This document shows positions 1 through 55,411 of a DNA stretch of 64,000 nucleotides, in pieces. The translations under genes and the position numbers were made by a program. Positions within the stretch are counted from its first letter, which is position 1. Each line of letters begins with the position of its first letter. The stretch comes from Eutreptiella sp. 'Long Island Sound 2002' (lineage: Eukaryota; Protista; Euglenida). The stretch is taken from assembly GCA_964036045.1 (NCBI GenBank), contig OZ038378.1, forward strand, positions 197,532,001-197,596,000. Direction: 5' to 3'. The notes beneath the pieces were generated by a model, which saw only the letters and a program-made list of their open reading frames with translations, was not told the origin of the DNA and did not search any database.

Positions 1-1955
1 TTAGTTCACGGCCCCCAATATGTATGCTAAAGCTCAATCCCCACCCCTACTCACAAAAATTCAGTCCTCATCTGCTAGCATATTGGATACCCCTCTTGAC
101 AACACTTTTCCTCTCCTTTGTCAAAGTGAAACAACAGTGCAACATAATTTCAAAACGGGATGCGGCGTCTTAGTAGTTCTTTTGCACATATTCACTCACG
201 CAGTGGAAATGTTGTTCTCTTCATGTGGCCAGGTATGCCAGGCTTTGAAGGAGGCTCTTATGATAGGCTGCTCCAGGACTTATGACAGTTTGATGAACAC
301 CATCAATGCGGACATTGGAGGAGCACCAATTTGCCAACTGCGGTCCCTTAGTGTGTGTGGCTGACATAAAGGTTGGGCACATTTTTCCTAGTTCCAAGAA
401 ATTAGGTGGGGGATTAGCTCATGAGCGAACTCTGTTGAAGATGTGTCGTAATTATTGACAACGCGTACTTGCTGCAATAATGATGGTCAACAACATCGCC
501 CACAGACAACACCAAATGAAAAGCAAGCTTGGATCCCCCCAAGCAAAACTCCATACTTGATGCAGCTTTTACACTGTTACATTTCGGCATAACGTTTCAT
601 TTCTCTTATGCCGACTCATATGTCGGCCTATAGGTCCTCATTCGAGATATTTGTGATTGATCTTTCTGAGCCCAATAGACGGAGTAGCTCGGCTAGCACT
701 GAAGAGCAGTGATTCATTTTTAGGGCCCTTTCACGGCTTGAGGATCAGAGATTTGTGGCACCGTGTGTCCTTTGGTGAAAGCATTCAACCCGCACACCAG
801 AGGCTTCGTATGCCTTCGCCCCCCCCCCCCCCCCAGTCAAGCCCCCTCGGGCGAGAGGGCAATGGCACAATGGCCATCACAAGCTGCTTTGTAGAACAGA
901 CATTGTACACCACAATGCCTCCAGAGAACGTTTCAAAGGTCCAAGGAGTGCAATGGTCCAAGACGTGCACATGAGCTTGGGCACGGATGTCTTGCAATTG
1001 CGCTATGGCGATCGTGTGAAATGTGACATTGATGCACCCCCCCACCCTGAAGCCTGAAGCCTGAAGCCGGCTCGCATCTCTACCGTTCCTGGGCAGCATG
1101 TGTGGCAGTTCAAGATTGTGTGGGACCCCAATAGGCAAATTTGCACTATCTTTGTTCAGCAATAGGGACAGGTAGCAGATTGATGATTCAGTGCTGTGCA
1201 TTGTGAGTATTTTCTTTTTTGCATCATGTGCATGACCCATCAGCATCTGCACATGTCGGTGTGTATCCTGAAGCCTTGTACAGCAAGCGACCGATAAGCC
1301 ACGGATTTTGCCTCGGAAGGGCTTGGTGTGTGTTGTGCAATTGTCCCCCCCCCCCCCCCCACTGGTGCATCACTTGACGCCTCCCCTCCCCCCCAAGGGT
1401 AGGCATGGCATTTGATGTACTAGTGTAGGCTCGCGGTGGTTTTTCTGGCACTGTGTGTTCAAAACAAATGAAGTCGTGTCACTGTGTCATGATCTTCATC
1501 GCTTTGTCGGTGTTGCATGCAATCCCCTTGTTGAGACAGCAGTTTGGTGCACTTGAACCCAAACACGCTAGCAGACTTGAAACTGATGCCATCGATGTAC
1601 ACTTGGAGTAGCTGCCCCCGAGTTTGTGGACCACATGAACCTCCATGTACAAGCAATTGCAATGTGCGCAAACACAACAGTGGATGTCATATTGTTGCCG
1701 AGCAAAGGAACTCACCATGGGACACAAAGTGTTGGAGGGGCCAAAGCGCCACCCCACTAAAACCCGTAGACTAAATAGATACATATTATCTAGGCACTGT
1801 GCATTCCACCCAAATGTTTTGGGGCCGGTGAAATTAACGCGTCATGTACGCCACTGCCTCCTTGTTAAGTTGAAGAGCCGTGAGTGCTCACTACGCTCAA
1901 ACCGCACACAACGTGTTTCACAATCTTAGAGTGTTTGTCATTGTTAGTAGTCACC

Positions 1956-4900: not shown

Positions 4901-6508
4901 GCAAGAGGTGTTCTGAAGGTAGGTGATAAGGTTCGGGTTCTTTGGGCTACACCATTAGGTCCCAACAAAGATGGCCCAACCGCTATGTATTTTTCCAAGG
5001 AGGAAAGGACAAGAAAATTTAGTTGGATCTTTGGAAGCGGCAGGCCTGGCGGGGACTTTGTTGAAGGTGTCCCCGTTGGACTCTCTACTATTCCGTGGCC
5101 ATGTTCAGGGGAATGCAAGTTGGACATGGTGTTGGTTCGGGGGCTTTTTTTTGTGAGTGCACTTCGACAAATGGAAGGACAACTTGGGCAAGCAAACTCC
5201 TCCGGAGAATGGGACACCACCATTCGACCTGTCAAGGAGTATTTCAACAACCCTGAGGACGTCATGGCTTTTGAGATGAATGTTCCGAGCGAACGGCTAC
5301 TGAAACTTGATCGACCCGACACTGACCCACTTATGGCGCAGCTTAACCTTGTTGCTTTGGTTGAATACCGGCAAGGTTTTTCCACTGACCTCCTAGCTCG
5401 CCATTGGCAAGGCAACCTCCCTGAGCCTTTGAGCCGCCATGTTGCGCTAACCTTCTTGCGCCGCATATGCATAAACCGCTTCTTGGAGCCGGAAGCACCC
5501 GATGCTTGCACTAAGCCTGCACCAAAGGGTCAGGCCAAGCGAACCGCGCAGGCAAAAGATATGCGAAGAGATGTCCGAGGTACAGGGGGTGCCTTTGATG
5601 GGGTGGGCCACTGCCTTGTTGTCATCGCCCAAGCAACAAGGAGTGAGGGTGGGTTGGAATGGGAGGTTGAGATTCTTGAGGCAGGAGCTGCCACTTCTTC
5701 AGTCATTGGACGAGTGTGCAAGCTCCTTGCCAGCATAGTGCGTAGGGCGGTGCCTGGCGCGAATGTGAAAGTTCAACGCTGGAGCCAGCCCGGCTTCCGA
5801 CGCCAGGTCCCCACGCCTTTGAATCCAACAAAAAAGGTCCGACGAGCAGCAGATGGGCAGCCACGTTGTGGCTTCACTGCAAGCAAAATTTTGGGAGCCC
5901 TAGCACGGGACGGTTTGCTGAATCTCAATGAAGTCACCCAGGAGCGGTACGATGTTTTCACTGTTGAGGAGTGCTATGCACTCCTCGAAAGTCTTCACAA
6001 ATGGATGGAAGGGCTCCTGCTACAGAGGGCTCAGCGGTCTGAGCACTTCTACAAGGTCATGGCAACGTTGTCGGCAGATCTAAAGGCAGCAGATGCGGAA
6101 ACCAGGATTGTTCAACCCTGCCCCGACATTGATATTGTGAGGATGTTAGCAGTGTGCCTAGGGGGGCGGGGGAGTGCCAAACCTCATTTCTTGTTTACAT
6201 CTCCCTCCCACGAGGAGGGAAGTTTCGACAGTTTTGTGAAGTGGTGGCAAGGCACTAGGGCGTATACAAATAAGGAAACATTTGTTCAGGGCATGGCATC
6301 GAATGAGGTGCGGCAGCAGGGTTGGTTGGTTTGGTTCCCCGTGGGTAGCCCCATTTCACCTCAAGGACTTCACCATGCGAAGGAAAATGGGCATGGTGGC
6401 AGCAGGATTGGGGCGGGGAGGCCTCAAAAACTTGCTTATAAACGAAAGCGAATCTTCTCCAAGCCAAGAAAGGGTCATGGAGGCAGCAACATGGTGAGCT
6501 CCAACTAA
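1956..6508 (+). CDS. Spliced Ulp1/C48 (SUMO/ubiquitin-like protease) family gene, about 1286 aa, probably transposon-borne. Exon model 1956-2063, 2356-2559, 2960-6508
   Basis: The 1170 aa ORF contains WLNAQVIDYY, FFPVHTGNHF (His 3407), VFDS (Asp 3464) and QDNNRDCGVFV (Gln 3605, Cys 3623), the CE-clan H-D-C triad plus oxyanion Gln. The start is CACCATG at 1956. Phase-0 GT-AG introns 2064-2355 (CAG|GTGTTG...TTTCAG) and 2560-2959 (AAG|GTATGT...TCTTAG) join all three exons in frame. Confidence 0.8.
3890..4745 (+). repeat. Ala/Pro/Thr-rich degenerate coding repeat (linker) within the Ulp1-like gene
   Basis: Recurrent APSLAPTTT / PTPAPSP peptides encoded by AGCCCC/ACCACA-rich DNA. Confidence 0.8.
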
Positions 6509-7825
6509 GTGTTGCGTAGATTACATTTTTTTTGGCCTTTAGTCAATGACCGCATACCCCTTTCTTGATTTGCATTGTGTGGAGCCGTTGCCCGTGATTA
6601 CACCTATTATGGTGAAAAACCCTCAATGTGATCAAGTGCACCAACCATGTTTCGACCTAAATGGCAAAGAAGGCGTTCGTGTGTTCTCCATTCGCTCCTT
6701 CCACTATTTGTTTTGCATGTTGGCCTCCATTGGCCGTTCGCATACAATTTGTTACATTCGCACAAGGATCAGGAGGTTGCAACATATGTATACTCGATGG
6801 TTGTCCATACTCCACTTTGCCGCAAATGGGATTTGGGTGGTCTTTGTATGATCTGGTGCTAACCCATTTGCCACTTGTCGTGTTGGACGATGGACATGTG
6901 TTACAAATTAAAAAAAGGGCGCCTCAAGTGTGACGTGATATGGTCGTTCCATGAAGAGTTAATAAATTTGCTTAGAATCTTTGCGCTGCACAACCGTGTC
7001 ATGAATTCATGGTTGAACATTGAGCAAAGTTTTGTGAATGGCCCAAATTTCTTTTGTGTATGTGCTTTTTAACCTTTGTAGTGTCATCATCATCTGATGC
7101 ATGTGTTTCCATGCACACCACTCAACAACTCTAAATAGCATCAACGTTCGAACTGTCTGTTTAACGGCTTTGGCTTTGCACTTTTAACGCTTGCAGTGAT
7201 ATCACCATTTGATGCATGGTATTCCATGGCTCACCACCTAGCAACTCTAAGGAGCACAACACCCCCTTGAGCAGGTTTATGGGTTTTGTTTTTTGGTCCG
7301 GTTGGTTAACCACAACGTTGTATTCTTTTCCTTAGATAGATGCATGGACAATGAATGTCATCACTCAGTGCAGTGTTCCTAAAGATTTTTCAATACAATC
7401 CTTGTACATGAGAGAAAATCCCAACCGGCACCATGCAATTGTCCCAAATGCACTTGCACACTTGAAAATTCCAAGCATAGTAACCAGCCATGGGAAATAG
7501 ATGTGAGCAAGTGAGTCACCGATCAGCGTAGCTCCCCCCCCCCCCCAATTTTGGATTTGTGGAGGAAATGCAATCTTACCAGACCTATGGGCGGCAGGGG
7601 CCATCGACTTTGGGGGTTTCCATACCCTCCGGTGGTGCGGGGTGACCCCACGGTTTTTCTATGTCCCCGAATTTGGTGAACATGATGATTGCAGTTCAAC
7701 CAAACCCCTGCTAGGATTAAGGTGGCACCTAGTCAAAGTGGTAAAACTTTGAGTGTTGGTTGTGTTTGTACACTTGTTGTCTTGCCCAAGGTATGTTGCT
7801 ATGACCACGGGCTAAAATTCTTCAT

Positions 7826-8187
7826 TTCCGATTGTTTGGCAGGTTTTGCCGCTCTGCCTGCAATTTTTTTGTACAATAAAGAACGCCTGCCCCTTTTTCC
7901 AAGCCCAAAATTGACGGGTCATTCTTGAAATAACACCCCCTCTTTTTTCTGATCCCCCAAAAGGAGAAAAAAACATCAGTGTGTCTGATTGCACTAGAAT
8001 GTTGCATTCCGATTGTTTGGCAGGTTTTGCCGCTCTGCCTGCAATTTTTTTGTACAATAAAGAACGCCTGCCCCTTTTTCCGAGCCCAAAATTGACGGGT
8101 CATTCTTGAAATAACACCCCCTCTTTTTTCTGATCCCCCAAAAGGAGAAAAAACATCAGTGTGTCTGATTGCACTAGAATGTTGCAT
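7826..8187. repeat. Direct tandem duplication, 2 x 181 bp
   Basis: TTCCGATTGTTTGGCAGG...GAATGTTGCAT occurs at 7826-8006 and 8007-8187, near identical. Confidence 0.9.
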
Positions 8188-8379
8188 GTTGATTGTGGCA
8201 TAGATGCATCCGCTACGCACGGTCTTCGTTACAACCCGGCAAAGGTTTCCGACAATTCAAGACCGTGGGTTTGTGTGATGTTATTCTATGATGATATTTG
8301 ACAAGGCAAGTTGGACGGGGTGGAGGTATGGGATGCACTGGTCCACCCCCCGATTGGGAATGGTCGTGAAGTGTGGGAA

Positions 8380-9800
8380 CGGTCGTTGGGAAATGATTTG
8401 TTGACGAGGTGAGGAATCACCAAGAGTAGCCGCCTCCGGACTTGTGGACCAAATGAACGCACCAAAATGGGGCACCATGTAAGCGACCCAAACACACTAG
8501 CGGACTTGAAATTGTTCGCAACTTCAGAAACTCGCGTTGGGAATGGAAGCGTTCATGGGTCAAGTGGCACACACACTAGCTGCCTCGCAAATGCTGGACG
8601 GAATGCACACCCCACATCTTCACGCTATGTAACCTACCCAAACACACCATCGGATTTGAAATTCTCGTCAAGTGTAGGATCGTACGTTGGGAAATGAATT
8701 GTTGACGTGGTGCGGTATCACCTGGAGTAGCTGCCCATACACTTCTGGATAAAATGGTCGCCGAATGCCCGAAATGCCCGACGGAATGGACACACCATAG
8801 CTTGGAGCCATGCAATCTACTCAAACACAGTGCCGAACTTGAAATTGTCATCAAATGTAGGATTTTGTTTTCGGAAATGAAGTGTTCATGGAGTCAAGTA
8901 TCACTCACAATATCTGCCCCTAGAATGCAGGACGGAATGGACACACCGTACCTTGGAGCCATGCAATCTATCCAAACACACCGCCGGAATCGAAACTGTC
9001 CACAAGTGTAGGAGCTTGCGTTGGGAAATGAAGTGTTGATGGGGTCCAGTAACACCCATAGTAGGTGCCCCGAGAATGGTGGACGGAATGGACACACCAT
9101 GCCTTAGCGCTACGCAATTTACCCAAATCAGCCGCCGGACTTAAAATGGTTGTCAAGTGTAGGAACTTGCGTTGGGAAATGAATTGTTGACGGGGTGAGG
9201 TATCACCCGCAGTAGACGCCCCCGGGCTTATGGACGAAATGGACGCTAGAATGCTTGACGCAATGGACATGTCATATCCAGGCGCTATGCAATCTACCCA
9301 AACACACCTCCGGACTTGACATTGTCGTCAAGTGTACGAACTTACTTTGGGAAACGAAGTGTTAATGGAGTTAAGTATTAATAGCCATAATAGCCATCTC
9401 TTGGCGCTATGAAATGCACCTAAACACGCCGCCGGACTTGAAATTATCGTCCAGTGTAGGAGCTTGCGTTGGGAAATGAAGTGTTCATCGGGTGAAGTAA
9501 CACTCATAGTAGCCGCCCCTAGAATGCCGCACGAAAGGGAGACACCATATCCGGGCAGTGTGGAATCCACCCAAACACGTGAGAGTGAGGCAACACGCAT
9601 AGTAGCTGCGCACAAACATCTAGGCTACATGCACCCGCCATATCCGGGCACTACGGAATCTACCCAAATGCAATGACTGCCTTCGCATTGTTTCTCAAGG
9701 TACAAACTGAATGTGCAGGGGATGAGGCAACACTCATAGTGGGTGCCCCCACCATTTTGGACTGCATGCACCCTTTTATGCGGGCAGTGTGCACTAGCAC
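8380..9800 (+). repeat. Diverged array of the ~150 bp satellite family, just upstream of the SET-RecQ-MULE gene
   Basis: Recurrent GGACTTGAAATTGT...GGGAAATGAA(G/T)TGTTGA...ATGCAATCTACCCAAACAC motifs, homologous to the 20280-25860 array. Confidence 0.75.
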
Positions 9801-9887
9801 TCAAACTTACGTGGTGACCCCATAGATGCGGGGCAAGCATTGGTTCCTATGTCTTTGTCCTCAGTTGTTTTTTTCCTGCAATTTACC

Positions 9888-12800
9888 ATGAACGGCCACC
9901 CTTTGCAAGCCCAATTTGATCTTCTGGTTCAAACCAAGTTGCTACCACAGTATGGTACTGTAGCCAAGCAGCTGGTGGTGAAACCCTCCTTGTTGAATGA
10001 TGCCGGCAATGGGTTGTTCACAAACTGCCTCATCAAGAAGAACGAGCTTGCTACCTTTATGGAGGGACGGCTAATAGCCCGTGATGAAGCAATGGAAACC
10101 ATTAACTCCAAAGGGGACTCATCCTACTACCGTACACTAATCAGGTCTCATGTGCCATTGACCCTATGTGCTTCCTCCACCAAGTTTTGTGGGATTTCAT
10201 CCAATGCTTTTTGCCAATGTGCTCTACATATTCTGCTGCATTTTGCAACACTCTCAAGTGCATTTGACCACCCAAAGCCGGAAGGCGCTTAAATTGGTAC
10301 TCCTGACAGTAGTGGGCAATTACGTTGTTGGCGCAATGGGAGATCTCGCCGGGGAAAACATCCATGCATGACGTGGAGGGCAATATTTTTATCCCGTCCT
10401 TGCATTCGTCCCACATCTTCCACAGTCAACAGTTGGGAATTGATGGTATTCGACAACCGCCTTTGGGCAGGAGTTTTGGCGCAGCATCTTTCGCCAATGA
10501 TGCCGGCAAATTTTGCAATGTGAAATTCATTATTAAGGAATTTCATGAAGGATGTCTACCCGTGTGCTTCTTGCAAGCATTGCGAGATATTAAGCCGGCA
10601 GAGGAGTTATTTGTCAGTTACGGCTCCACCTACTGGGATCGCTCCGAGCACATGGTTACTGTTACAGAGGATCCCAATGGCTTAGTACAATCACACATGG
10701 CCCCCAGCCCTCAACCAAAAGAGACGTCAGAAAATCAGTTGAACAGTCAGCTTGACAGCCACGCAATCAGCGAATCACACAACGAGCCAAGTGATAAGGC
10801 AGCCAGCAACATAGACACCCCTACGAACATACAGCCAGGGGACCACCAAGACGGCCACCCAATTAGCCAATTGGGCAACGCGTTAGGCAGCCGGTCAGCC
10901 AACGGACCTACCGACCAGCCAAACAATCAGGTGGACAGCCATTCACAAAGCCGGATAGATGTTTCGGCCGGTCAGTCCTTGGCGGGTCAAGCACACGGTG
11001 AGGACGATGATGACGAGGATGATCTTGATGCACAAATTGCAGAAGCTCAGCGGCACTTTGATGCTCTACTTGAGAGGCGCGTGCATCTCTACGATACAAA
11101 GATAAAGGTGGAACCTGATTGCTACGATTCGCAACACATCGACCAGGGACCGGATTGGGGCGCTGAAATTGCGGCGGCGGAGCATGCCCTTGGCAAAGTA
11201 CTTTATCCGCACCAAAAAAAGACCTTGCGTGCCCTACTCAACGGCCGTGACGTGCTTTGTGTTTCGGGAACTAACAGTGGCAAGTCACTCCCAGCCCAAA
11301 TGCTTGCGCACATCACTCGTAAACCGGTGATTGTTTTTGAGCCTTTGCGAGCAATTATTACCACACAGCTACAGGAATGTGAACGGTTAGGGATTGCGGC
11401 GTACAAGTTGGAGGCAAACACCCCGTTTCCGAACATCTCCCCGGGTGCAGCTATGGTGTACACCACTCCTGAGAAGGTGTCGTTGTCCAACGACGCCCTA
11501 GACAAGTTGGTGGATTTGGATCCTGTGGCCTTTGTTGCAGACGAGGCTCACAAGGTCGCCCGAAGTGACAAAACATTTGGGCAGCAATGGACGGAGCTTG
11601 GGATTTGCCGACAAAGACTGCCCACCGTGCCGTGGTACGCATGCACAGCAACGGCCACAACACCTGAGCAACAGGCCATTATCGACCGCCTACACCTTCA
11701 AAATGCAGTGAACGTCCGTGGCATTCTCTACCGAGAAGAAATATCAATGGATTTTCACCACTACGCTCAACCGGTGAAACCTCAAAGACGTCATGCTCCT
11801 GAACTTGGTCCTTCCCCTTGTAAGGGGCAAGACATTGATCTTTTTCACCAACGTCGAAAAGTGCACGAACATGGTCAATATGTTGAAGAAGAAGGGTTTT
11901 AAAGTGGCGAGCTTCACTGGTGCAACACCATCTTCTACCCGTGAGGCCGTCCTTAAGGACTTGGAGCAAGGGCTCATCGATATTGTGTGCTGCACTGCTG
12001 CTTTGGAAATGGGTTGGCATGTCCCCGGCTTGCGGACACTCATCTTCACCAGTGTGCCATCCTCCATAACGCAGCTGATTCAGCTATTGGGGCGCCTTGC
12101 CCGCGGTACGTCAGATTGCGGGGAGGTTCACATTCTATACCACCAGCACTCCCTGCGTACCCTTGCCAACTGGCACAAAGACAAGGTCAAGGCCCATGCA
12201 AATTACCACCTCACCTTGAACGACTACACATGTATGTATATGTTGATGCACACCCCAGGTTGCCGGTGGCAGAATTCGTTCCAGCATTCCGACCACGTGC
12301 TGTTGGAGCCTTGTGGCACTCGCTGTGATAACTGCGTGAAGAACAGGCCACCAACAGACGCGGGGTTTGTGCTTGGCCTCTTTCTTCCGGCTTTAGCCTT
12401 GTGCGACAAAAGCGACGGCATTTGCCTTGGGCACTGCTTAGACCTCATTCAAGGGGTGCGACCCAAAGACCATTACGAGCGATATGGGCAGGAGCTTTGT
12501 AATGCTCTCTTTGAGGTGGGCATTGCTAGCCAGCATGCTTGCGGGAGCAAGGGCTCGAAAGACCAATGGAGGGCTGTCATCATGAAAGGCATGGATTGGG
12601 AGTTGGTGAAAGCGATCCCGAACATCGACAGTGTGACTATGAATTTGAAGCTTGGGGAAGTGGAGTTCAATGACAAAGACTCGTACATCCTACATTTGGA
12701 AAAGGCGTTGCCGCAAGCGCCTCAAAATTTAAGTGAGCATGCTGCAGATGCGCTGGAGGATGCCTACCCGCTTCCTATGACGACTGCTGATGTGAAGCGG

Positions 12801-15428
12801 CTATTTCGTGGAACCCTTCTCACTGTAGATGAGGTGCACGCAGCCCAAATCGACCACTTCGCTTGGACTCCAAGGGAAACGCTTCGACTAAAGATTGAAG
12901 CTTGCGTGGTGATGCCATCAAATTCAGAAGTTTGCAACGTGAGCATTGCCGTGAATTCAAGGGGAAGATTGGAGCAAGCAGCGGGGACATGCGGTCTAGT
13001 GGCTGAGGACGGCTCTGCTGCTGGTGGCTACCGTTGCCAGCACTGCTATGCTGTTGCCATGTCCCTCGCACTTGAACAGTGCGAGAAGAAGGTGCCCGGA
13101 CAACGGCGCACGGTGTTAGAAGGCCCATCCACCCGAGCTCAGCGCCTACAAGCAAAGCCAAAGCTCCTTCAGCTTCTGGAGAAAAGGGAATATGTGAAGC
13201 TTGACAAGCCCATTGATTGTCCAAAGTGTGACACCTTGTACGTGGCAGAAGATGTGTACGACTTGCCTTATGGGACCGACGACATACTTCCAGCATCCCT
13301 TGAGCTAACACGGTCTAGCCACGTGAAGAAATATTTTGGATATGATGAAGGTTTTGGCTGCCACCTAGCCTCGCAGGCGTGGACTTGCGCTGGCGCGCTC
13401 GTTTGCAAAGCAAATTCCTGCCGGGCCAGGGACAACAACGCCCAAACCGTGATCTGCCAACATGGAGAAATGCAGAAAAAACGGTGTGACGTCCGCATTT
13501 TTCACCTCTACCCAGTTCTGTTCCAGGGGTCCGTGGAACCTGATGAATACAACCGCCTTCGACTTCTTGCATTAATCCGCAGAGACACGTTGGAGTTGGC
13601 TCCTGGCGATGACCCACCCAGTGTGAATGGTTGGGCTGGACACTCTCACCCAGTGCTAAAAGCCTTCAAGCCGCCTACACACTTGGATGATGAGATCTTA
13701 CAGTGGTTCATTGACGACCCCAATCTCACGCCCCGAGAGGCACTAATGAAGAAGCTGACAACCGGCAAGACACCGCCGGGCGAGAACACCATGTACACAA
13801 ACACCATGAGGATTGAGCAGCTCAAAGAACGGGCTTTAGTGTTGAAGAGGGATGATTATGAAGATGCCCATCGTTTGTTGAAGCGGTGGCTCAAAGACGA
13901 GGCATATTGGCTGCCAGACGACATGACAAATTATCTTCGGTCTGTCAAAACCAACACGCCTGAAAGGCCTGTCTTTGCTAGTGACGGCATGTTGAAGATT
14001 GCGGCAAAAGGCAAGGTTTTGGAGGTTGACATAACATTTTGGGACCATACGTTTATGAAGTACCTTCTCAACATTGTGGTGTTTGACGAGGACTTGACCA
14101 AATGGTGGACCACGTTCCGAATGGCTACCTCAAAGCAAGATGCTGGGTTTTATCATGAGGCATTTCTCAAGTTCCTCGACTTGACAAAGGAGACCGACCC
14201 GAATTTCAATCCTTTGCAGTGGCTAACAGTGGTCATGGATTTTTCGCAGGCCCAGCTCAAGGGACTGAAGTCCGCTCAGAAAGAGTACCTAAAGAAGCAA
14301 AACATTGAGTTGTCCGATGATGAGTTTGAAGCCTTTGTGGTCCGGGTGTTCCAAGGATGCCTACTTCACTTCCTGCGATGTGTGGAGGAGTGGTCCAACA
14401 AGATAGACAGCGAGATTGCCTCTGCAATGTTCAAAGAACGATGCAGGGCCATTCCTTCCATGTCAAAGGAGGCACGTGCGGAGATGTGGGATTGGCTGAC
14501 AAAGCATTACAAAGCCCTTGAGGGTTTCATAAAGTTCTGGCGTGCACCGGAGGTGGATGCGTTGCTTTGTCATTTGCATCAAGGGAAGACGTTTGCGGAC
14601 TGGGTAGCTAGCACGCGGGATAGCAATGCGGTGGAGAGCAGTCATCGACCAGTGAAGGCGAAGGGCAAAAGCTTGGTTGACAAGTACCGTATTGTCACGG
14701 AAACTGATGCCCTAGTTGGTTTGCAGAGGCAAAACGTGGAACGGTACTCTGACACAGTAGCGGATAGGTTTTGGGTATTGCGGACAAGACAGAAGGCTCC
14801 GGCCAAGGAACGACAACCAAGGGGCGACCGCTATGTCAACGATGGGAAACCTAAGAAAGGTACCAAGAGAAAGGGCACAAGTGCCGAGGCAAAACCTCGT
14901 TCCAAGAAGGTGCGGTTCAACGAGGAACCCGCAGAGTTGCATGAGTACTCGCAACCGTCACAAACTCAAAACACACCTGGAACTCAAAGCACAACCGACG
15001 TCATTCCTTCGGAAGATGATGATATGGCCTTGACGCAGAATCCATGTGGTGCTGCAGAGACTCGACAAGTCACATTGAAGCATGTAAAGGATTCACCTCC
15101 CGCCCTCAACAGCATTATGGCAACGTATACCACCGACAAGTCCAAAGTTTGGTTTGCCTTTGCACGGGAAGAGATGAAGAGCGGCTGGAAGGTTGATTGG
15201 GTGGAAAAAATTGAGGGACTTGACGTGCATTATCGGGTTGACAAGCTGGCACGTGACAAGCGTGACAAGGTGGAAATGGAGTGTATCGCTGTGACACAAG
15301 TCCCATTTTCCTGTGAGTGTGGTTTCCGGAACGTAACGGTGCAGACATGCCAGTGTAGAGTGGTGCAAATCACCAAGGACCACCTAAAGTCTTGCATCAG
15401 TTTGGCGAAGAAGCATAACAAGAAGTGA
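9888..15428 (+). CDS. SET - RecQ helicase - SWIM/GCM-like Zn fingers - MULE (Mutator-like) DDE transposase multidomain gene, about 1750 aa if the +1 frameshift at 11777-11779 is corrected. Exon 1 9888-10144, exon 2 10426-15428
   Basis: ACCATG at 9888. A phase-2 intron 10145-10425 (AG|GTCTCA...TTCCACAG|T) rebuilds YYRTLISQQLGIDG. The 525 aa ORF (to 11902) and 1211 aa ORF (from 11793) overlap with a +1 offset in the middle of the helicase. Domain motifs are given in the following features. Confidence 0.8.
9972..10639 (+). other. SET lysine methyltransferase domain (split by the intron)
   Basis: VKPSLLNDAGNGLFT (GxGLF), FANDAGKFCNVKF (NH-type motif with H replaced by D) and ALRDIKPAEELFVSYGSTYW (ELxxxYG..YW). 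Confidence 0.85.
11201..12335 (+). other. RecQ-family SF2 helicase core with RQC Zn-binding motif
   Basis: YPHQ (motif 0), SGTNSGKSL (I), FEPLRAII (Ia), YTTPEK (Ib), DEAH at 11540 (II), TATAT (III), TLIFF (IV), TAALEMG (V), QLLGRLAR (VI), then CRWQ...CGTRCDNC (RQC Zn). Confidence 0.92.
12984..13652 (+). other. Degenerate SWIM-like finger followed by GCM/WRKY-like Zn finger region
   Basis: GTCG...YRCQHCYAV (SWIM-like; the first Cys is missing), CPKC, TCAGALVCKANSC (CxGxxxC) and GHSHP, which is the pattern found N-terminal to MULE catalytic domains. Confidence 0.55.
14010..14660 (+). mobile_element. MULE/Mutator-type DDE transposase catalytic domain
   Basis: VDITF (D 14028), MDFSQAQLKG (D 14238), GCLLHF (CxxH 14358-14369), FIKFW, NAVESSH (E 14634). 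Followed by an NLS-like KPKKGTKRK and a C-terminal CECG...CQC cluster. Confidence 0.85.
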
Positions 15429-18400
15429 TTTCTGCAAGCGCGCTCAACAGTTGCATCGAGGGTTTCATGACCCTTGCCATGGGAGGCCCAAGTGGGCATG
15501 GCAGGTCAACATATAATATGCATCAAAGAATTGAACTCATGAGATTTCGCTCCGCTGTGTTCTTTCTTTTTTGTTGAAATCACAAGCTCGCAGCAGTGGA
15601 CAACCATGCTTGGCCTTGGTAGTAAAGTATAAATTGTGGATCTTCCGAGCACTCATGGGGTTCTCCCAAGCACCTTTGAATCACAAGTTTGCAACATATC
15701 TGCACTGCAAAGTCAAGTCATGCCGGTTGGCACATGATTTATGCATTAGAGGACCAAATCACATGTTTGGGATATTCCTCTCTTTTGTTTGAATGAGAAG
15801 GTTGCAACACCTACGACCGCACTTGCATTTGCTGGTCATTGATCACTCCCATGGTCATGGTCAAGGGAAGATAGGTTCCCTCGAACCGGTTCTTTTTCCA
15901 TTTTTCTTCTTCGCCGACTCCTTTGTCCACACATTCAACCTTATTTGTTTTGCCCACATGATTCAATCCACCCATCCCCCCACCAAGCAATTCATGGGGA
16001 GACGGGAGCTGGACTACAAGAGATGACAGAGGTGCATAGCCATAATGTGAGGACTCACAAGTGCTCACATGTTGTGGACCCCTCATCTATGACGTCTGGT
16101 CCTTGTCGAACCGTGATTGCCCGCTGTGAGCACTTTCGTCTTCTTTCTCCCCTTGTAGGCCATAGTTTTGCTCCCAACAAGTACCTCAATCTCCTCTTGG
16201 GGTGTATTTTGTGGCGGGGACTTCCCTGAGTCGTTCCTGACTGATGATAAGGCCACATAATACTCTTGACTGCGCCCACACTTGTTCCTTGAGCTTGTCT
16301 TTCGAGTAGTACCCCCCCCCCCTACATCCCACATCTCTCCCCGTTACCGTAGTCATCTATGCAGGCTTGAGTGAACGCTTTGGCAATCCCCCCCCCCTAT
16401 TTTCTCTAATTATCGGCCGGTTGGCCCACTCATAGTTCCCCCTTCTATCCCCCCCCCCCCCCCACAATGCGGGAAGCCACCCTTAAGCAGGTTGTTGGAT
16501 CACAATTTCCCTTCCTTCTACCTTCCCTCTTTTCCCATGTGTCTGGCAGCCCACACACTTGGCAACCCCGTAATTCTATTGCTAGCCCCAGGTTGCAGAG
16601 ATGAGGCAATTGAACGTGTGATGTAGCCAATGTAATTTTGTTTCTTGAACTGTGCATTTTCTGTCCCATACCTCCTTGCCGTCACCTCCCCATCCACCGT
16701 GACCCATGCTTTGGGATGTGGGTGAATCTTTGTATAATTGGGTCAGGGACAGTTTATAGTATGGTGTCGATTTATGTTGAGAAAAAACGGTTGCAAAATA
16801 TTTGCGCGAATGGTGGTGGTTTGGGTTCTACCCATTTCTTCACTCGTGACACAACATTTTTGCACTCTTTGGCCGCGCGCATATTCGTTCTTATCAAATT
16901 TCCACTTATCTTATTACAAGAGCATCTTCAAAGTTATAAACGCCCCCAAGACATATGAGCAATTACAATATTTGCGATGTACCTTGGAAATGGGGGATGC
17001 CCATTTTGTTTTTTCTCATCTTGTGATCTTTGAGTTTGCTCAAGCTTTCATGCTCACAGTATGTCTTCTCCTAGCAAAGGCTGTGAGTGCAACCTGATGC
17101 ATTGGCTGTTGTGGAAGTGTGAAAATAGCAAGTTGGCATCTATCCGTATGAGAGGATTCAGCCATATTTTTTAGTGGTGCCTTGTTTCTTTTGCAAATCA
17201 CAAGATTGCATATCCGCCCACAACCGTGTCATGAATTCTAGGTTGAACCCTTGAAAATGGCACAATTTTGTGACCAACCCAAGTTACGGAGAAGTTTTTT
17301 TGTGCATGTGTTTGTTGACATTTGCACTACTTTGTCATTTGATGCCATGGCATGCCACTTAACAACCCTAAACAGTGCAACATGTCTGCGAAACGGTTCT
17401 TCGGTCTCACTGTCCTCTTTAAATACCACCCCCACGCAGTTTATGGCCCACGCGATGCCGGTTCCTAAATTGCAAGAAACACATCACGTGGTGCTGCACT
17501 GCGGTTGGGAGGGCGACACATGGTCAGCAGACAGCATGCACTTCCGCATTTGAATTCGCGTATTCTCATCCTGCGCCGATGCAGAACGAAAGGGTGGGGG
17601 CAGAGGAATACAATTCAGCCACAAATTATAGCAAGCCTGAGGCGCCATGAATTGGCGCATGAGTGTGACAGAATAGCACGTCTGTGGTGACAGCGATAGG
17701 TTAACCAGCTACGGTTGCGATGGAACGTTGTGCATATCCCTCAAGTTTGTGGTGCCCCATACCATTGATGTCCTTGGGATTGGCTACGTGTCCTTCAGAC
17801 TGCAACAAATGCTTTGAGTTTTTGCTTTGTTTGTTTGTGGAGAGTTTGTGTCCCAGACCCGTACACACCCTAATACCCAACACATTGGTGGACTTCAATT
17901 TGTTGCCAAGCGCGCGAACCTGCCACGGGAAATGAAGTGTTGATGGGGTGCAGTAACACTCATCGTAGCTGACCCCACTCGTTATCTAATTCAATAGTTC
18001 ATTTGACCCTGAATTGCCACACTTGTCATTCCCCAAAATTTTGGGCTGAATGGACCCGCCATATCCGAGCACCATGCAAATTACCAAAGCACATTAGCAG
18101 ACTTCAAATTGTTGCCAAGCGTAGGAACCTACTATGGGAAATGAAGTATTGAGGGGGTAAGGTAGAATGAAAAGTGATGGCACGCGGCAGTGGTATGCAG
18201 CAATTGCACCTTGTGGATGCCACATGGACGGCACATCCCGGGGGCCATGCCACTTTTGCTTGCTAGGTTGGGCCATAGTGACGGGCCCTTCCCTAGTAGC
18301 GTTGGTGTGGCTGAAGCATGCCATGGTGCAAGGTGCATTACGAAGGCATGGCACCTATCTTGACAGCGCACGCTCACCGCGAATATGTGTTTCTTCATGG

Positions 18401-21400
18401 CAAGACATTACGGAACTGATCGGCATTGTTTGTTTCACATAGTTGCATGATTGGGGAGAGGGCGCCTTGGTGGATGCTTCTCTTTCACAGGTTTCAGCCC
18501 AACTCTGCGCTCGACCATGCTTAAAACGCCATGAACTTGAAATTAGCGAGCAGTGGACTCAATATGTGCCTATGGACGGTGCCCCAAAACTACGTCCGTT
18601 TTCAGTGCAGTTGCATTGGGAAAGGCCCTCCACACACTCAATGTGTGTGCACGAGCTGGCAACCATCTTCCACAGTTTTCAACCCACTGTAGCATGTTGT
18701 GGGTCACGTACTCCGCGTGCGGTGCTGCATACAAGTCCATTGGGCATTGCAAAGGGTGGTCTCCAAAGAAGCATGCTCCTTAGTGAAATGAGATCTTTCC
18801 CTTTTCTTTGAAAAACCTTTGCTACCCCTCCAATGCAGGAAAACGATGGTGCGCTGCAGCTGTTTCAGAGGAGTTTGCACCACTTTGTGTAGAGGTAACC
18901 CACAGTGTCACGAGAGGCAAAGCCGATATGCCAAATTTTTGTACGTACAGCAAGTACGCACGACTAAAGGACGTCTCGTCACTGCGGATGGAGCCCTGGA
19001 AGGCTCACCTTGATTGAGAGTGTTTTGACAGCGCTGCCCGCCATGAGCTTCTAGAGCTGACACACTCGATGGCACACAAGTGTGGGGAACATGTGCGCAA
19101 TGCATTCCACGCCGTGCATAGCGTGGTTCGTTGTTTCGGGGGGTTGTGTTAGACGTACCGCCTAGAGTAATTTCCTTGCACACCCATGAACAGTAAACCT
19201 TCATTGTGGTCAAAGCATCACTGCACATTTGGACTTGGTAGCTGGTCCGGATTTCTCCCGTCTACTATCCCTACTTTCACCGCTGCCCATTTCTTTTCTT
19301 TTGTGCAGTGGCAGTCTCCCAAATGAATGGCTTCGTCAAGGTTGGTATGGGCAATGCCTATGAGGAGAAGAGCAAAGTGATGGTAGAGTGGCCTGGAAAA
19401 GGCCTGCCGCCACAAAGACAAGCTGAATGCCGAGAGGATGCAGCACGAGGAGGCAAAGGAGGCCCATTGATGAGCTGCACAAAGCCCCAGGCCAAGGCCA
19501 AGAGGTGCTTGGTGTTGTCAGTGGGATCTTTGAACCACCCACTCCTGAACCCTCCTTTGCCTTGGATAATCTGGTGGTGGTGGACTTGAAATTGCTGCCA
19601 AGCCCAGGAACCCGCCATGGGATAAGAAGTATTGATAGGGTGAGGCTGGTCAGGCCGGTCATGAAGGTCCCCCCACGGGGGGGGGGGGGGGTAGCACCAC
19701 ATGATTGTAGCATGAAAACCGAACCAATTCCAATATAACCTATTTTCCTTCGGCGCCTTCAAGGACTGGGGGCCTTGTTGTTCTTGGCACGGGCAGAATG
19801 GGCACTTTTGGGACGGACAACCCACCAGTGTGGTACTGCTTCTATAGCAGAGAATGAGGCGTGGTGGGAAATAGCAGTCCTGTAGTTGAGGGACACCATT
19901 CCCTTACAACCTACTTTACAAATTACCAATCACAACAGCCCCTCATTTCCCCAAACCTTTAACCTAAAACCGCCTGGTACCTGATTAAGTACCTAATTAA
20001 AATAATACCATCGGAACGGAAGTGTTCGTTGGACCGAGAGGGGGGGGTTCCCGCTTTTTTGTCAAAGTGACAATCCCCCTATAGGGGGGATGATGACAAG
20101 GGTGGGGGGTAAGTGAGACGTGGGAGGGGCGGGGTGTACTGTGGCAGCAGAGGATGAGTGTAGAATGTCGATACCCGTGCTCATAGGTCCATCATTGCAG
20201 CCACCCCATTGCTGGCGCTTACACGTTCGGAGGGTGCTCTCCAATACATCTGATGTGCACACTAGGTGAGACGTGAAAGCATGCGGTAACACTCATAGTA
20301 GCTACGCGGAAAACTTTGGATTGAGTGAACCCGCTATATGCAGTCACCATTTAATCTACCTAGACACACCGGCGGACTTGAAATTGTTGCCAAGCGGATG
20401 AAGTTGCCATGGGGAGATGAAGTGTGCGGTAACACTCATAGTAGCTGCCCCGAAAACTCCAGGCTAAATGAACCCGCTATATAGGAGGGCTATGTAGGCT
20501 ACCTAGACGCACCGGCGGACTTGAAATTGTTGCCCAGCATAGGAACCCACCATGGGATAAGAAGTGTTGAGAGGGTGAGCTAATACTCATGTAGCTCCCC
20601 CCCCCAAAATTTTGGGCTGAACGGAGCCGCCATATCCATGCGTTATGCAATCTTCCTATGTACACACCTTGGCTCACTTGAAATTGTTACTAGAGAGGGT
20701 AAGGTAACACTCACAACAGCTTCCCGAAAAATATTTGGGCCGAATGGACCCATCATATCCAGGCACTTTGCAAACTACGTGGACGCACTGGAAGACTTGA
20801 AATTGGTACCCAGCATAGGAACCAACCATGGGAAACGAAGTGTTGAGGGGCTGAGGTAACACTCATAGTAGCCGCCCCACAACTTTGGGGTGAATGGATC
20901 CGCCATTTCCAAGCACTATGCAATCTACCTATGTACACACACTAGCAGACTTGAAATTGTTGCCAAGCATAAGAACCCGCCATGGGATAAGAAGTGTTGA
21001 GAAGGTGAGGTAACACTCATAGTGCTGCCCCCCCCCCGCCCCAAGAAAATTGTGGGCTGAATGGACCGCATCCGAGCACTATGCAATCTACCTATGAAAC
21101 TTCATTGGCGGACATATCCAGGCACTATGCAAACTACCTAGACGCACTAGCGGACTTGAAATTGTTCCCAGACATAGGAGCCCACCATGGGACAAGAAGT
21201 GTTGTGAGGGTGAGGTAACATTCATAGTGGTGGCCCAAAAAGAATTGAGGCGAGTGGACCCACCCAGACACACTAGCGGACTTGAAATTGTGGCCAAGCG
21301 TATGAACGCACCATGGGAAATGATGTTTTCAAAGGTTGAGGTAACACTCATAGTAGCTGCCCCCCCCCCCCCGCCCAGAAAATTGTGGGCTGAATGGACC

Positions 21401-25860: not shown

Positions 25861-26570
25861 CAGGTCCATCGCCATGCCAATTTTGCTGTGTTTGGATGAG
25901 TCGCTTTTGTTGTTTCGCTCTGGTGTTGCATTGATTAGTTTCGCTTTTGTAGCGCTTTTGTTTTTCAACTTCATTCACGGATGTGATGCGATGCAAGCTG
26001 TTCCTCCACCTGCAAAACAAACGTATTCAAAAGCGAAAAACAAAAGCGAGATGACTGTCGAAATATCAACAAAACAAAAGGGGCGTTTTCCACCTGTGAC
26101 ACGAACAAACAGATTCGAAAGCGAAAAGCGAGACTCAAATGACTTCACAAAAACGACACAGAATGCACGTGTCTTTGCAACAAAACACAACAAAAGACCT
26201 TACATTCAAGTGCGACGCAAGTGGATTGTTGAGTGGTGATTGCAAGCGTGCAGGTTCATGTTTCCAATGCTGTGTTTGCATTGTTTTCGAATGCTTGTAG
26301 ACTGTCCTTTTTGTTTTCGAGTTCTGTTTTTGTATATTGCAGGTGCTTGTGCGTTCAGTTCACTTGCCGCTGGTTCCACTGCCGGTTCGGCAAACAACAA
26401 TTCCACCGAGGAGTTTTCCAGAGAGCAGCGTGTCTTTCTGCGGGTGTGTGGTCAGTACATGGAAGAAGAATGACAGTGATCCCCACTGTTTGCCTGTCCA
26501 CACAAGCAGTGTGTCGTGGTTGCTGAGTGGGGACCTCTTTTCAGACGCAGAGTGATCCAGCCAGGTTTTT

Positions 26571-36555: not shown

Positions 36556-36758
36556 TCATCCCATGGACGTTGGAAGGCACGCTACAGCCCAGTCAGCTGA
36601 GATTCACTCCTTTGGTGTTCATTTGTCAACGTGGTTAACTGTTGCAAAGGAGCCTTTGCTTGGTAGCTCTGGTTTTTGATTTGGTTTGCTACATTCGATG
36701 CTTGGTAGTGTAAGTGCTGTGTGGCTTGGGTGCATTCGTATTTGGTGTCTTGGTGGTT

Positions 36759-38096
36759 GACTTGACCAAATGGTGGACCACGTTCCGAATGGCTACCTCA
36801 AAGCAAGATGCTGGGTTTTATCATGAGGCATTTCTCAAGTTCCTCGACTTGACAAAGGAGACCGACCCGAATTTCAATCCTTTGCAGTGGCTAACAGTGG
36901 TCATGGATTTTTCGCAGGCCCAGCTCAAGGGACTGAAGTCCGCTCAGAAAGAGTACCTAAAGAAGCAAAACATTGAGTTGTCCGATGATGAGTTTGAAGC
37001 CTTTGTGGTCCGGGTGTTCCAAGGATGCCTACTTCACTTCCTGCGATGTGTGGAGGAGTGGTCCAACAAGATAGACAGCGAGATTGCCTCTGCAATGTTC
37101 AAAGAACGATGCAGGGCCATTCCTTCCATGTCAAAGGAGGCACGTGCGGAGATGTGGGATTGGCTGACAAAGCATTACAAAGCCCTTGAGGGTTTCATAA
37201 AGTTCTGGCGTGCACCGGAGGTGGATGTGTTGCTTTGTCATTTGCATCAAGGGAAGACGTTTGCGGACTGGGTAGCTAGCACGCGGGATAGCAATGCGGT
37301 GGAGAGCAGTCATCGACCAGTGAAGGCGAAGGGCAAAAGCTTGGTTGACAAGTACCGTATTGTCACGGAAACTGATGCCCTAGTTGGTTTGCAGAGGCAA
37401 AACGTGGAACGGTACTCTGACACAGTAGCGGATAGGTTTTGGGTATTGCGGACAAGACAGAAGGCTCCGGCCAAGGAACGACAACCAAGGGGCGACCGCT
37501 ATGTCAACGATGGGAAACCTAAGAAAGGTACCAAGAGAAAGGGCACAAGTGCCGAGGCAAAACCTCGTTCCAAGAAGGTGCGGTTCAACGAGGAACCCGC
37601 AGAGTTGCATGAGTACTCGCAACCGTCACAAACTCAAAACACACCTGGAACTCAAAGCACACCCGACGTCATTCCTTCGGAAGATGATGATATGGCCTTG
37701 ACGCAGAATCCATGTGGTGCTGCAGAGACTCGACAAGTCACATTGAAGCATGTAAAGGATTCACCTCCCGCCCTCAACAGCATTATGGCAACGTATACCA
37801 CCGACAAGTCCAAAGTTTGGTTTGCCTTTGCACGCGAAGAGATGAAGAGCGGCTGGAAGGTTGATTGGGTGGAAAAAATTGAGGGACTTGACGTGCATTA
37901 TCGGGTTGACAAGCTGGCACGTGACAAGCGTGACAAGGTGGAAATGGAGTGTATCGCTGTGACACAAGTCCCATTTTCCTGTGAGTGTGGTTTCCGGAAC
38001 GTAACGGTGCAGACATGCCAGTGTAGAGTGGTGCAAATCACCAAGGACCACCTAAAGTCTTGCATCAGTTTGGCGAAGAAGCATAACAAGAAGTGA
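36759..38096 (+). pseudogene. 5'-truncated copy of the MULE transposase (lacks the first catalytic Asp and all upstream domains)
   Basis: Matches 14091-15428 except for a few substitutions (DALL to DVLL, TTDV to TPDV, one synonymous change seen). No ATG-initiated homologous N-terminus. Confidence 0.9.
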
Positions 38097-40310: not shown

Positions 40311-40320
40311 CTCTCCCTCC
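40311..40320 (-). promoter_or_regulatory. Polypurine tract (GGAGGGAGAG on the minus strand)
   Basis: Abuts the 3' LTR start on the minus strand. Confidence 0.85.
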
Positions 40321-43389: not shown

Positions 43390-43409
43390 TTAGATTCGGG
43401 CCACCTCGC

Positions 43410-46990: not shown

Positions 46991-46994
46991 AGTC

Positions 46995-48230: not shown

Positions 48231-48252
48231 CCCCTCGCGTGGCCCGAATCTA

Positions 48253-55406: not shown

Positions 55407-55411
55407 TTGTG

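What the first reader, a model, noticed from the sequence alone, without database searches (positions are those of the whole stretch)
9888..15428. SET methyltransferase + RecQ helicase + Zn fingers + MULE transposase in one gene
Seen: one spliced reading unit carries SET motifs (GNGLF, FANDA, ELFVSYG..YW), all RecQ motifs 0-VI plus the RQC Zn site, SWIM- and GCM-like Cys/His clusters, and an intact MULE D-D-CxxH-E set. RecQ and transposase lie in one uninterrupted 1211 aa frame. Established: RecQ helicases occur in AcademH transposons, and MULE transposases normally carry only Zn fingers. Inference: a transposase fused to both a helicase and a lysine methyltransferase is an architecture I do not recognise. 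It could unwind or repair its own excision/insertion sites while writing histone marks, and may define a new giant MULE lineage.
Basis: partly seen in the sequence, partly recalled or inferred. Interest (0 to 1): 0.92.

Follow-up and report, generated by a model that had tools for sequence, protein, structure and literature searches.

The report
SET–RecQ–Mutator-like transposase gene in a euglenid
This is a real gene of a euglenid alga that joins a SET-type methyltransferase domain, a RecQ DNA helicase and a Mutator-like DDE transposase; helicase–transposase fusions of this kind occur in other eukaryotes, the SET part is the new feature, and this copy carries a 2-bp frameshift.

Summary
One two-exon gene on the + strand (9888-10144, then 10426-15428) encodes four parts:
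- a SET domain split by a 281-nt GT-AG intron;
- a RecQ helicase with a DEAH box and the CGxCDNC zinc site;
- a conserved Cys/His cluster;
- a DDE core with D, D, CxxH and E intact.

The window copy is broken. A 2-bp deletion at 11785/11786 separates the helicase N-lobe from the 1211-aa frame. Sister-strain reads carry the missing AG, which gives one 1753-codon ORF.

The transposase matches no Pfam family. Its AlphaFold model matches only Mutator/IS256-superfamily proteins: ISCth4, FAR1, ZSWIM and IS256. Distant homologues have the same RecQ-then-transposase order, and one has a kinase in place of SET. The helicase–transposase fusion is therefore a conserved family, probably the described AcademH or a sister of it; I could not test that. 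SET is a lineage-specific addition, also present in a second genome.

The one cDNA found is spliced-leader-primed and from Eutreptiella. It confirms exon 1 and the start codon, but it splices exon 1 to 26343 and skips RecQ-transposase.

I found no TIRs or TSDs, so "giant MULE" is unsupported.

The scan's first readers noted similar fusions at two other loci of this genome.

The parts
8337..9773 (+). Array of about 151-bp satellite repeats directly upstream of the gene. The same repeat precedes the homologous gene in L003.
9863..9864 (+). AG acceptor used for spliced-leader trans-splicing. The mRNA body starts at 9865, giving a 23-nt 5'UTR.
   Evidence: The X14 cDNA contig covers 9864-10146. 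Its 5' loose end is the modified Eut-SL primer.
9888..10144 (+). Exon 1: start codon and the N-terminal half of the SET domain (GNGLF at 10005-10019).
10145..10425 (+). 281-nt GT-AG intron, phase 2, inside the SET domain. This splice is predicted and was not seen in RNA.
   Evidence: Sequence. An intron remnant is conserved in L003.
10426..10640 (+). Start of the large exon: C-terminal half of SET (SFANDAGKFCNV at 10487-10522, EELFVSYGSTYW at 10601-10636). The NH motif reads ND.
10641..11200 (+). Low-complexity, acidic linker between SET and the helicase.
   Evidence: translation
11201..11774 (+). RecQ helicase N-lobe: motif 0 at 11201, motif I SGTNSGKS at 11264, DEAH at 11534-11557, motif III at 11642.
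11783..11788 (+). Frameshift site: 2-bp deletion in a short AG repeat. Sister-strain contigs carry AG behind 11785.
11787..12335 (+). RecQ helicase C-lobe (motifs IV-VI, 11832-12104) and the RecQ zinc-binding cysteines (12258-12335, PCGTRCDNC).
13380..13487 (+). Conserved Cys/His cluster (C-x5-C-x4-C ... C-x-H ... C) upstream of the transposase core. It is a candidate WRKY/GCM-type DNA-binding zinc module.
   Evidence: The fold was not tested.
13890..14900 (+). Mutator-like DDE transposase core: D 14028-30, D 14238-40, CxxH 14358-69, E 14634-36.
15090..15428 (+). Conserved C-terminal domain with a CxC...CxC cluster, then the stop codon at 15426-15428.
26343..26450 (+). Downstream exon joined to exon 1 in the only cDNA seen (junction 10144|26343, GT..AG, a 16.2-kb intron). 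Its 3' end is not determined.
36735..38096 (+). Second, 5'-truncated copy of the transposase 3' part. It starts just after the first catalytic D and lies inside a large duplicated block.

Best explanation
This is a low-copy DNA-transposon gene, or a very recent derivative of one, in a euglenid (Eutreptiella) genome.

The intact form is a 1753-aa protein made from two exons. In order it contains a SET-type methyltransferase domain (with ND in place of the NH motif), an acidic linker, a RecQ-family SF2 helicase with its zinc module, a Cys/His DNA-binding candidate, a Mutator/IS256-type DDE transposase core and a small Cys-rich C-terminal domain.

Shown here:
- the domain content;
- the catalytic residues;
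- the Mutator-like fold;
- homology to other RecQ-transposase fusion proteins;
- purifying selection on all parts;
- the 2-bp frameshift in this copy;
- SL trans-splicing at exon 1.

Inferred:
- The DDE core cuts and pastes the element.
- The fused RecQ helicase processes transposition or repair intermediates, for example by steering repair of the excision break towards non-crossover copying from the sister.
- The SET module methylates a chromatin or repair protein at the site, as the SET half of SETMAR is thought to do.

The helicase-transposase core is an old, widespread module that most likely corresponds to the AcademH kind. N-terminal enzymes (SET here, a protein kinase in P0068) are lineage-specific add-ons.
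For: - Gene model and motifs.
- RecQ identity.
- SET halves. The ND variant and ELFVSYG are conserved in L003.
- Intact 1753-codon ORF with the AG of the sister strain.
- Transposase family: 55 homologues by exhaustive phmmer, with the D-D-CxxH-E columns conserved.
- Structure: AF2 model with core pLDDT above 90. The best solved match is ISCth4, an IS256-family transposase. The top AFDB clusters are MULE or GCM-domain proteins at E 1e-12. All 30 top Swiss-Prot models are Mutator-derived or IS256-family proteins. ESM Atlas matches reach TM 0.65.
- Pfam MULE matches 8 of 37 family members below threshold, and no other transposase family apart from the Mutator-family model Transposase_mut (2/37) matches.
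- Same architecture elsewhere: P0008, P0066 and P0068.
- Selection: dN/dS 0.31-0.43 at dS about 0.8 against L003.
- TE-like decay: a frameshift here, a truncated copy at 36735, a rearranged copy in L003, and 90-95% identical fragments in reads.
- Two unchecked scan notes report further loci.
Against: - No terminal inverted repeats or target-site duplications were found in the window or in L001, L004 and L005, so mobility is not shown.
- The two copies in the window share more than 10 kb of downstream DNA. That points to segmental duplication, not transposition.
- The only cDNA skips the RecQ-transposase exon.
- The protein itself matches no transposase Pfam model.
- The SET NH motif is altered, so activity is uncertain.
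- The helicase N-lobe scores higher to E. coli RecQ (66 bits) than to the helicases of P0008 or P0066 (13-33 bits). A single origin of the fusion is therefore not shown.
Confidence: 0.55

Rival explanations
1. It is a domesticated host gene of the SETMAR type. In this reading a SET gene captured a RecQ-transposase element, the fusion is now a cellular chromatin or repair factor, and the copies arose by local segmental duplication and decay.
For: - No TIRs or TSDs were found.
- The in-window duplication carries more than 10 kb of flank.
- A further copy lies only 94 kb away according to an unchecked note.
- Word depth in reads is flat and low.
- The mRNA is SL trans-spliced.
- dN/dS is about 0.3.
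Against: - The catalytic D, D, CxxH and E are all intact.
- The copies found are frameshifted, truncated or rearranged, and 90-95% identical fragments occur in reads.
- L003 shares no flanking DNA with the window apart from a satellite.
- Substitutions between the two strains are 8 nonsynonymous to 4 synonymous, which does not look like a constrained host gene.
- Relatives elsewhere are mostly short broken ORFs.
Confidence: 0.25
2. The SET exon and the RecQ-transposase exon are separate transcription units. Exon 1 would belong to a gene whose next exon is at 26343, and the RecQ-transposase element would sit inside that 16-kb intron.
For: The single SL-primed cDNA contig joins 10144 to 26343 at canonical GT..AG sites. 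No RNA shows the 10144|10426 junction, and a junction search of metagenome contigs found nothing.
Against: - Exon 1 holds only the N half of a SET domain. The C half lies at the start of the large exon, in the right phase and spacing.
- SET-C is contiguous with RecQ in L003 and is conserved at protein level, with the motifs identical and dN/dS 0.43. There is no in-frame ATG before its end, so it can only be translated through exon 1.
- The exon 1 to 26343 reading gives 85 aa of half-SET plus about 60 residues of Cys/Arg-rich sequence and then a stop.
- The library is tiny and the contig has depth 2.
Confidence: 0.12
3. The frameshift is an assembly error, and the window copy is in fact intact.
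For: The site is a short AG repeat. Sister-strain contigs carry the extra AG at 376 of 520 and 407 of 630 depth.
Against: The run of the window's own organism label (X1) shows no contig with the insertion (0 of 9.9 depth). That run may, however, be the data the assembly was made from.
Confidence: 0.15

Closest known systems
AcademH DNA transposons (Kojima 2020, Mob DNA 11:15; cited in PMC10045372 and PMC10799480)
   Same: - It is a DDE transposon lineage that also encodes a RecQ-like SF2 helicase.
- It is low-copy.
- One sublineage carries a chromatin-type add-on, a PHD finger (from my memory of the abstract).
- The structurally nearest uncharacterised clusters to this transposase are from Basidiomycota and Cnidaria, the groups where AcademH was reported.
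   Different: - AcademH is reported only from animals and fungi; this gene is in a euglenid.
- No SET domain is described for AcademH.
- The 9-10 bp TSDs were not found here.
- PMC9587614 does not list Academ among the superfamilies that share the C/DxxH motif, which this family has.
- Membership could not be tested: the paper and the Repbase sequences are not held.
Mutator/MULE superfamily and bacterial IS256 (MuDR, FAR1/FHY3, ZSWIM, ISCth4)
   Same: - RNase H-like DDE core with D, D, CxxH and E and an all-alpha insertion domain.
- All the best structural matches belong to this superfamily.
- Relatives give weak Pfam MULE and Transposase_mut hits.
- A Cys/His cluster lies N-terminal to the core, where MULEs carry WRKY/GCM/FLYWCH fingers.
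   Different: - This protein has no Pfam MULE hit.
- No SWIM finger is recognisable here.
- No long TIRs were found.
- I do not know of any described MULE with a RecQ helicase and a SET domain fused N-terminally.
KolobokH (PMC9587614)
   Same: The transposase and a RecQ helicase are in one protein.
   Different: - In KolobokH the helicase lies downstream of the transposase, and the lineage is known only from fungi.
- Here the helicase lies upstream.
- Fold matches here are to Mutator/IS256, then hAT and P. Whether Kolobok models were among the libraries is unknown.
SETMAR / Metnase (primates; my own knowledge)
   Same: A SET lysine methyltransferase domain lies upstream of a DDE transposase and is joined to it by splicing.
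   Different: - SETMAR is a single-copy domesticated host gene built on a mariner transposase, with no helicase.
- Here the transposase is Mutator-like, the catalytic set is intact, and the copies are multiple and decaying.

Membership tests
RecQ helicase family | SF2 core with motifs 0-VI and a DEAH box | tested here: met
   Pfam DEAD 2e-13 and Helicase_C 1e-16. Best PDB hits are E. coli RecQ, BLM, RECQ5 and WRN. In this copy the two lobes lie in different frames.
RecQ helicase family | RecQ C-terminal zinc-binding subdomain with four cysteines | tested here: met
   GCRW...PCGTRCDNC at 12258-12335. The alignment to E. coli RecQ runs through residues 234-452. Pfam RecQ_Zn_bind is not hit in this protein, but it is hit weakly (below threshold) in the homologues P0008, P0066 and P0068.
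SET-domain lysine methyltransferases | GxG AdoMet motif, NHxC motif and ELxxxY motif in order, with a Pfam SET hit at threshold | tested here: inconclusive
   GNGLF and ELFVSYG are present. The NH motif reads ND, and this is conserved in L003. The Pfam score is 16.3 bits against a cutoff of 22.4, on the C half only. Both halves top-hit SET proteins in the PDB at E 0.3-0.5. The spliced domain could not be submitted as one sequence.
Mutator/MULE-IS256 transposases | RNase H-like DDE core with a C/DxxH motif and an alpha-helical insertion domain | tested here: met
   Conserved columns. Secondary-structure order in the AF2 model. Fold matches.
Mutator/MULE-IS256 transposases | Match to Pfam MULE (PF10551) or Transposase_mut at the gathering score | tested here: not met
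   This protein has no hit. Eight of 37 relatives hit MULE below threshold, the best at 1.2e-4.
Mutator/MULE-IS256 transposases | Terminal inverted repeats and 8-10 bp target-site duplications | tested here: not met
   No flanking inverted repeats were found in the window, L001, L004 or L005. The true ends are unknown, so absence is not proven.
Mutator/MULE-IS256 transposases | WRKY/GCM/FLYWCH-type zinc finger N-terminal to the core | tested here: inconclusive
   A conserved Cys/His cluster is present. Language-model leads point to GCM, FAR1 and FLYWCH at scores below 0.8. The AF2 model was too poor to search, at pLDDT 46.
AcademH | Transposase groups with Academ reference transposases in a phylogeny | not testable with these tools
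   No Academ or Repbase sequences are available, and the defining paper is not held.
AcademH | Encodes a RecQ-like helicase with the transposase, and makes 9-10 bp TSDs | tested here: inconclusive
   The helicase is present. TSDs were not found because the termini are undefined.
KolobokH | RecQ helicase downstream of a Kolobok transposase | tested here: not met
   The helicase is upstream of the transposase here and in P0008, P0066 and P0068.

The most novel reading that the evidence does not exclude
The RecQ-then-transposase proteins found here form a Mutator-superfamily lineage of helicase-bearing transposons that has not been catalogued and is distinct from Academ and Kolobok. The group comprises the Eutreptiella gene, P0008, P0066 and P0068. 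It repeatedly recruits N-terminal enzymes that act on chromatin or signalling: a SET methyltransferase with a conserved ND variant in euglenids and a protein kinase in another host. The element also makes a short isoform by splicing its first exon past the whole helicase-transposase exon.
Probability: 0.3. Interest if true: 0.75.

Novelty: new variant of a known kind. Interest (0 to 1): 0.55.

Why it matters
- **More than one route to the same partnership.** Transposases that carry their own RecQ helicase are known from Academ and Kolobok. A structurally Mutator-like version in a euglenid would show that the partnership is older, or has arisen more often, than thought. That points to a general need for helicase help in repairing or resolving transposition intermediates.
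- **A natural analogue of SETMAR.** A SET domain kept under selection on such a protein would be a mobile-element counterpart of SETMAR. It offers a tractable case for asking whether a transposon marks chromatin or repair proteins at its own break sites.
- **Reference point for euglenid genomes.** Euglenid mobile elements are almost undescribed. A gene with defined SL-acceptor, start-codon and splice coordinates is useful for annotating these large genomes.

Tried and rejected
- **Word-index protein searches.** Searches with the transposase part and with the whole 1211-aa ORF found no transposase homologue; only one weak helicase hit came up.
- **Metagenome scans.** The protein scan of JGI metagenome contigs found no relative. 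An exact search for the predicted exon 1/exon 2 junction found nothing. Neither result is informative.
- **Profile search against PDB sequences.** The A1 profile gave only chance hits to ALKBH1.
- **Zinc-cluster structure.** The model of aa 350-620 had pLDDT 46 and was not searched.
- **Termini.** Searches for TIRs or conserved termini around the gene in the window and in L001, L003, L004 and L005 found nothing.
- **Exon 1 in L003.** It was not found by tblastn or by local alignment.
- **C-terminal cluster versus the SWIM of P0008.** No alignment was found.
- **Papers not held.** The AcademH paper and Yuan & Wessler 2011 are not available, so the Academ comparison rests on secondary citations and on memory.
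- **Giant transposon including the Ulp1 gene.** I considered this and rejected it as unsupported, because L003 has no homology to window 1-8300.
- **A failed script.** My first codon-by-codon comparison of the two window copies was thrown off by a 3-nt indel. I used only its translation.

Full report
**Anatomy of the gene**

The + strand between 9.8 and 15.5 kb holds three long frames.
- A short frame ends inside 10145-10292. It carries ATG 9888 and GNGLF.
- A 525-aa frame runs 10325-11902.
- A 1211-aa frame runs 11793-15428.

Reading the DNA gives a clean GT donor at 10145 and a polypyrimidine-CAG acceptor at 10425. Joining 10144 to 10426 keeps the phase (AG|T). This places '...SSYYRTLI' directly before '...GIDG...SFANDAGKFCNV...EELFVSYGSTYW', which is the order and spacing of a SET domain.

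**SET domain**

Pfam sees only the last block of SET (E 0.014, below threshold). Each half was then searched alone against all PDB sequences.
- The N half returns SETD7 in 16 of 17 hits.
- The C half returns SUV420H2, KMT5B and SETD7 in 11 of 11 hits.

Each E-value is only 0.3-0.5. Two independent halves finding the same fold family in the right order is far beyond chance. The NH motif reads ND.

**RecQ helicase**

The second frame continues through an acidic linker into a helicase N-lobe. Its best solved relatives are E. coli RecQ (3e-17), BLM, RECQ5, WRN and RECQ1. The 1211-aa frame opens with the helicase C-lobe (Helicase_C 1e-16; BLM and RecQ first). It is followed by the RecQ zinc motif PCGTRCDNC.

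**Frameshift in the window copy**

The two helicase lobes are in different frames, and the switch must lie between 11775 and 11792. That gap is too short for an intron.

Laying Logan contigs of four runs on the gene explained it.
- Both runs of a sister organism label carry 'AG' inserted behind 11785, at 376 of 520 and 407 of 630 word depth.
- The run with the window's own label does not.
- With that AG, the spliced reading is 1753 codons with no stop.

The window copy therefore has a 2-bp deletion in a short AG repeat.

**Transposase**

Residues 330-1211 of the long frame match nothing in Pfam and nothing by word-index search. An exhaustive phmmer run over 1.8 billion representatives gave 55 hits.

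Aligning 37 of them (A1) shows four conserved blocks: D-x-T, V-x-DFS-x-AQ-x-x-G, GC-x-VH-x-x-R and NA-x-E. The window residues are D 14028, D 14238, C 14358 / H 14367 and E 14634. They are conserved in 21/23, 32/32, 30/32 and 28/28 sequences.

An AlphaFold model built on this alignment has pLDDT above 90 through the core. It shows the strand-strand-strand-helix-strand order of an RNase H fold, followed by an all-helical insertion. The fold searches agree with one another.
- The best solved match is the IS256-family transposase ISCth4, then Hermes and the P element transposase.
- The best AFDB clusters are 'MULE transposase' and 'GCM domain-containing' proteins at E 1e-12.
- All 30 top Swiss-Prot models are Mutator-derived (ZSWIM1/3/9, NOF-FB, FAR1/FRS/FHY3, K. 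lactis alpha3) or IS256-family transposases.
- The ESM Atlas gives TM 0.65 to an unannotated Basidiomycota cluster, 0.58 to a cnidarian SWIM cluster, and about 0.5-0.57 to MULE clusters.

Scanned singly, 8 of the 37 family members hit Pfam MULE and 2 hit Transposase_mut, all below threshold. No other transposase family appears. The core is therefore Mutator-like by fold and motifs, but it lies outside the curated MULE model.

**The architecture occurs elsewhere**

- P0008 (1666 aa, a single ORF on metagenome contigs L001 and L002) reads DEAD, Helicase_C, RecQ_Zn_bind, the homologous transposase, then a weak SWIM.
- P0066 (1290 aa, identical in two NCBI assemblies) reads DEAD, Helicase_C, RecQ_Zn_bind, then a sub-threshold MULE hit.
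- P0068 (2127 aa) adds a full protein-kinase domain in front of the same helicase-transposase pair.

RecQ-then-transposase is thus a conserved module with variable N-terminal enzymes.

Published work already describes RecQ-bearing DDE transposons. AcademH occurs in animals and fungi and makes 9-10 bp TSDs (PMC10045372). KolobokH has the helicase downstream of the transposase and is known only from fungi (PMC9587614). [quoted passage not shown] That argues mildly against Academ membership. I could not obtain Academ sequences or the defining paper, so this stays open.

**SET in a second genome**

L003 is a 411-kb contig of another assembly, and its fragments are 60-73% identical in protein. It carries the following, in order:
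- the same upstream satellite;
- a remnant of the intron;
- the SET-C half contiguous with RecQ;
- the transposase.

Pieces of the L003 copy are inverted or displaced, it contains stops, and it has no recognisable exon 1. GAASFAND and EELFVSYG are identical in both copies.

Nei-Gojobori estimates against L003 give dN/dS 0.32 for the helicase, 0.31 for the transposase and 0.43 for SET-C, at dS about 0.8. SET-C has no in-frame ATG before its end. Its conservation as protein therefore requires translation from exon 1.

**RNA evidence and the host organism**

One small 2013 run holds a 327-nt contig that covers 9864-10146 exactly, with loose ends on both sides.
- The 5' end, GAGTGTCTATTTCTTTTC, is the modified spliced-leader primer used for SL-primed 454 cDNA of Eutreptiella sp. 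(PMC3621762). The host is therefore a euglenid. The mRNA is trans-spliced at AG 9863-64, and ATG 9888 follows a 23-nt 5'UTR.
- The 3' end matches 26345-26370 exactly. It lies behind a CAG acceptor, giving a 10144|26343 junction that skips the whole helicase-transposase exon.

That isoform would encode half a SET domain plus about 60 unrelated residues. I read it as an alternative or non-productive splice form. It is nonetheless the only transcript evidence, and it does not show the fusion.

**Is it mobile?**

- The window holds a second copy that begins just after the first catalytic D (36735-38096).
- That copy lies in a duplicated block running more than 10 kb past the gene. In the second block it is interrupted by an LTR element with 532-bp LTRs. 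This is segmental duplication.
- No TIRs flank the gene in any locus.
- L003 shares only the satellite and the gene with the window, not the Ulp1 gene upstream and not the unique downstream DNA.
- Diverged fragments in reads, the broken copies, and two unchecked scan notes of further loci fit a low-copy decaying transposon family better than a host gene. Transposition itself is not demonstrated.

**Verdict**

I rate this a new variant (SET-bearing, euglenid, helicase upstream) of a known kind of helicase-carrying DDE transposon.

Noticed in passing
window 14091-25376 vs 36759-39786 + 55407-64000: Large duplicated block at 98.9-99.7% identity. It starts inside the transposase core and runs to the end of the window. 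The second copy is split by an insertion of about 15.6 kb.
   Followed up: partly
window 39779-55406: LTR retrotransposon inserted in the second copy. Its 532-bp LTRs (39779-40310 and 54875-55406) are 99.4% identical. Long ORFs lie on the - strand at 48250-55038, and another repeat-rich element is nested at about 43.4-48.3 kb.
   Followed up: no
window 8337-9773, 17876-18184, 20257-25900, 58572-64000; L003 5210-5999: A satellite of about 151 bp occurs in both orientations. It forms long inverted arrays downstream of the gene and a direct array just upstream of the gene in both genomes. It could be subterminal repeats or simply a common genomic satellite.
   Followed up: partly
window 26343-26450: An exon used by the SL-primed cDNA, 16.2 kb downstream of exon 1. 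What it encodes and which further exons follow it are unknown.
   Followed up: partly
window 2996-6508 (+): A 1170-aa ORF. It has a Ulp1/C48 protease domain (Pfam 1.5e-6), a very long Ala/Thr/Pro-rich tract and an unassigned C-terminal part of about 550 aa. No counterpart lies next to the L003 copy.
   Followed up: partly
window 34000-36000: A 74% G+C stretch with overlapping ORFs on both strands lies directly upstream of the truncated second copy. Its nature is unknown.
   Followed up: no
P0068 (2127 aa; ENA contig of 249 kb): In another organism, one ORF carries a protein kinase domain (33-309) fused in front of a RecQ helicase and the homologous transposase.
   Followed up: partly
window 15090-15425: A C-terminal domain of about 110 aa is conserved in several relatives (WFA.A.EE...V.W, then CxC...CxC...C). 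It matches no Pfam family and does not align with the SWIM finger of P0008.
   Followed up: partly
window 6989-7018 and 17219-17248: A 30-nt direct repeat (93% identical) containing a GAATTC-centred near-palindrome. One copy lies upstream of the satellite array and the other lies about 100 bp past the point where the LTR element interrupts the second copy. Its significance is unknown.
   Followed up: no
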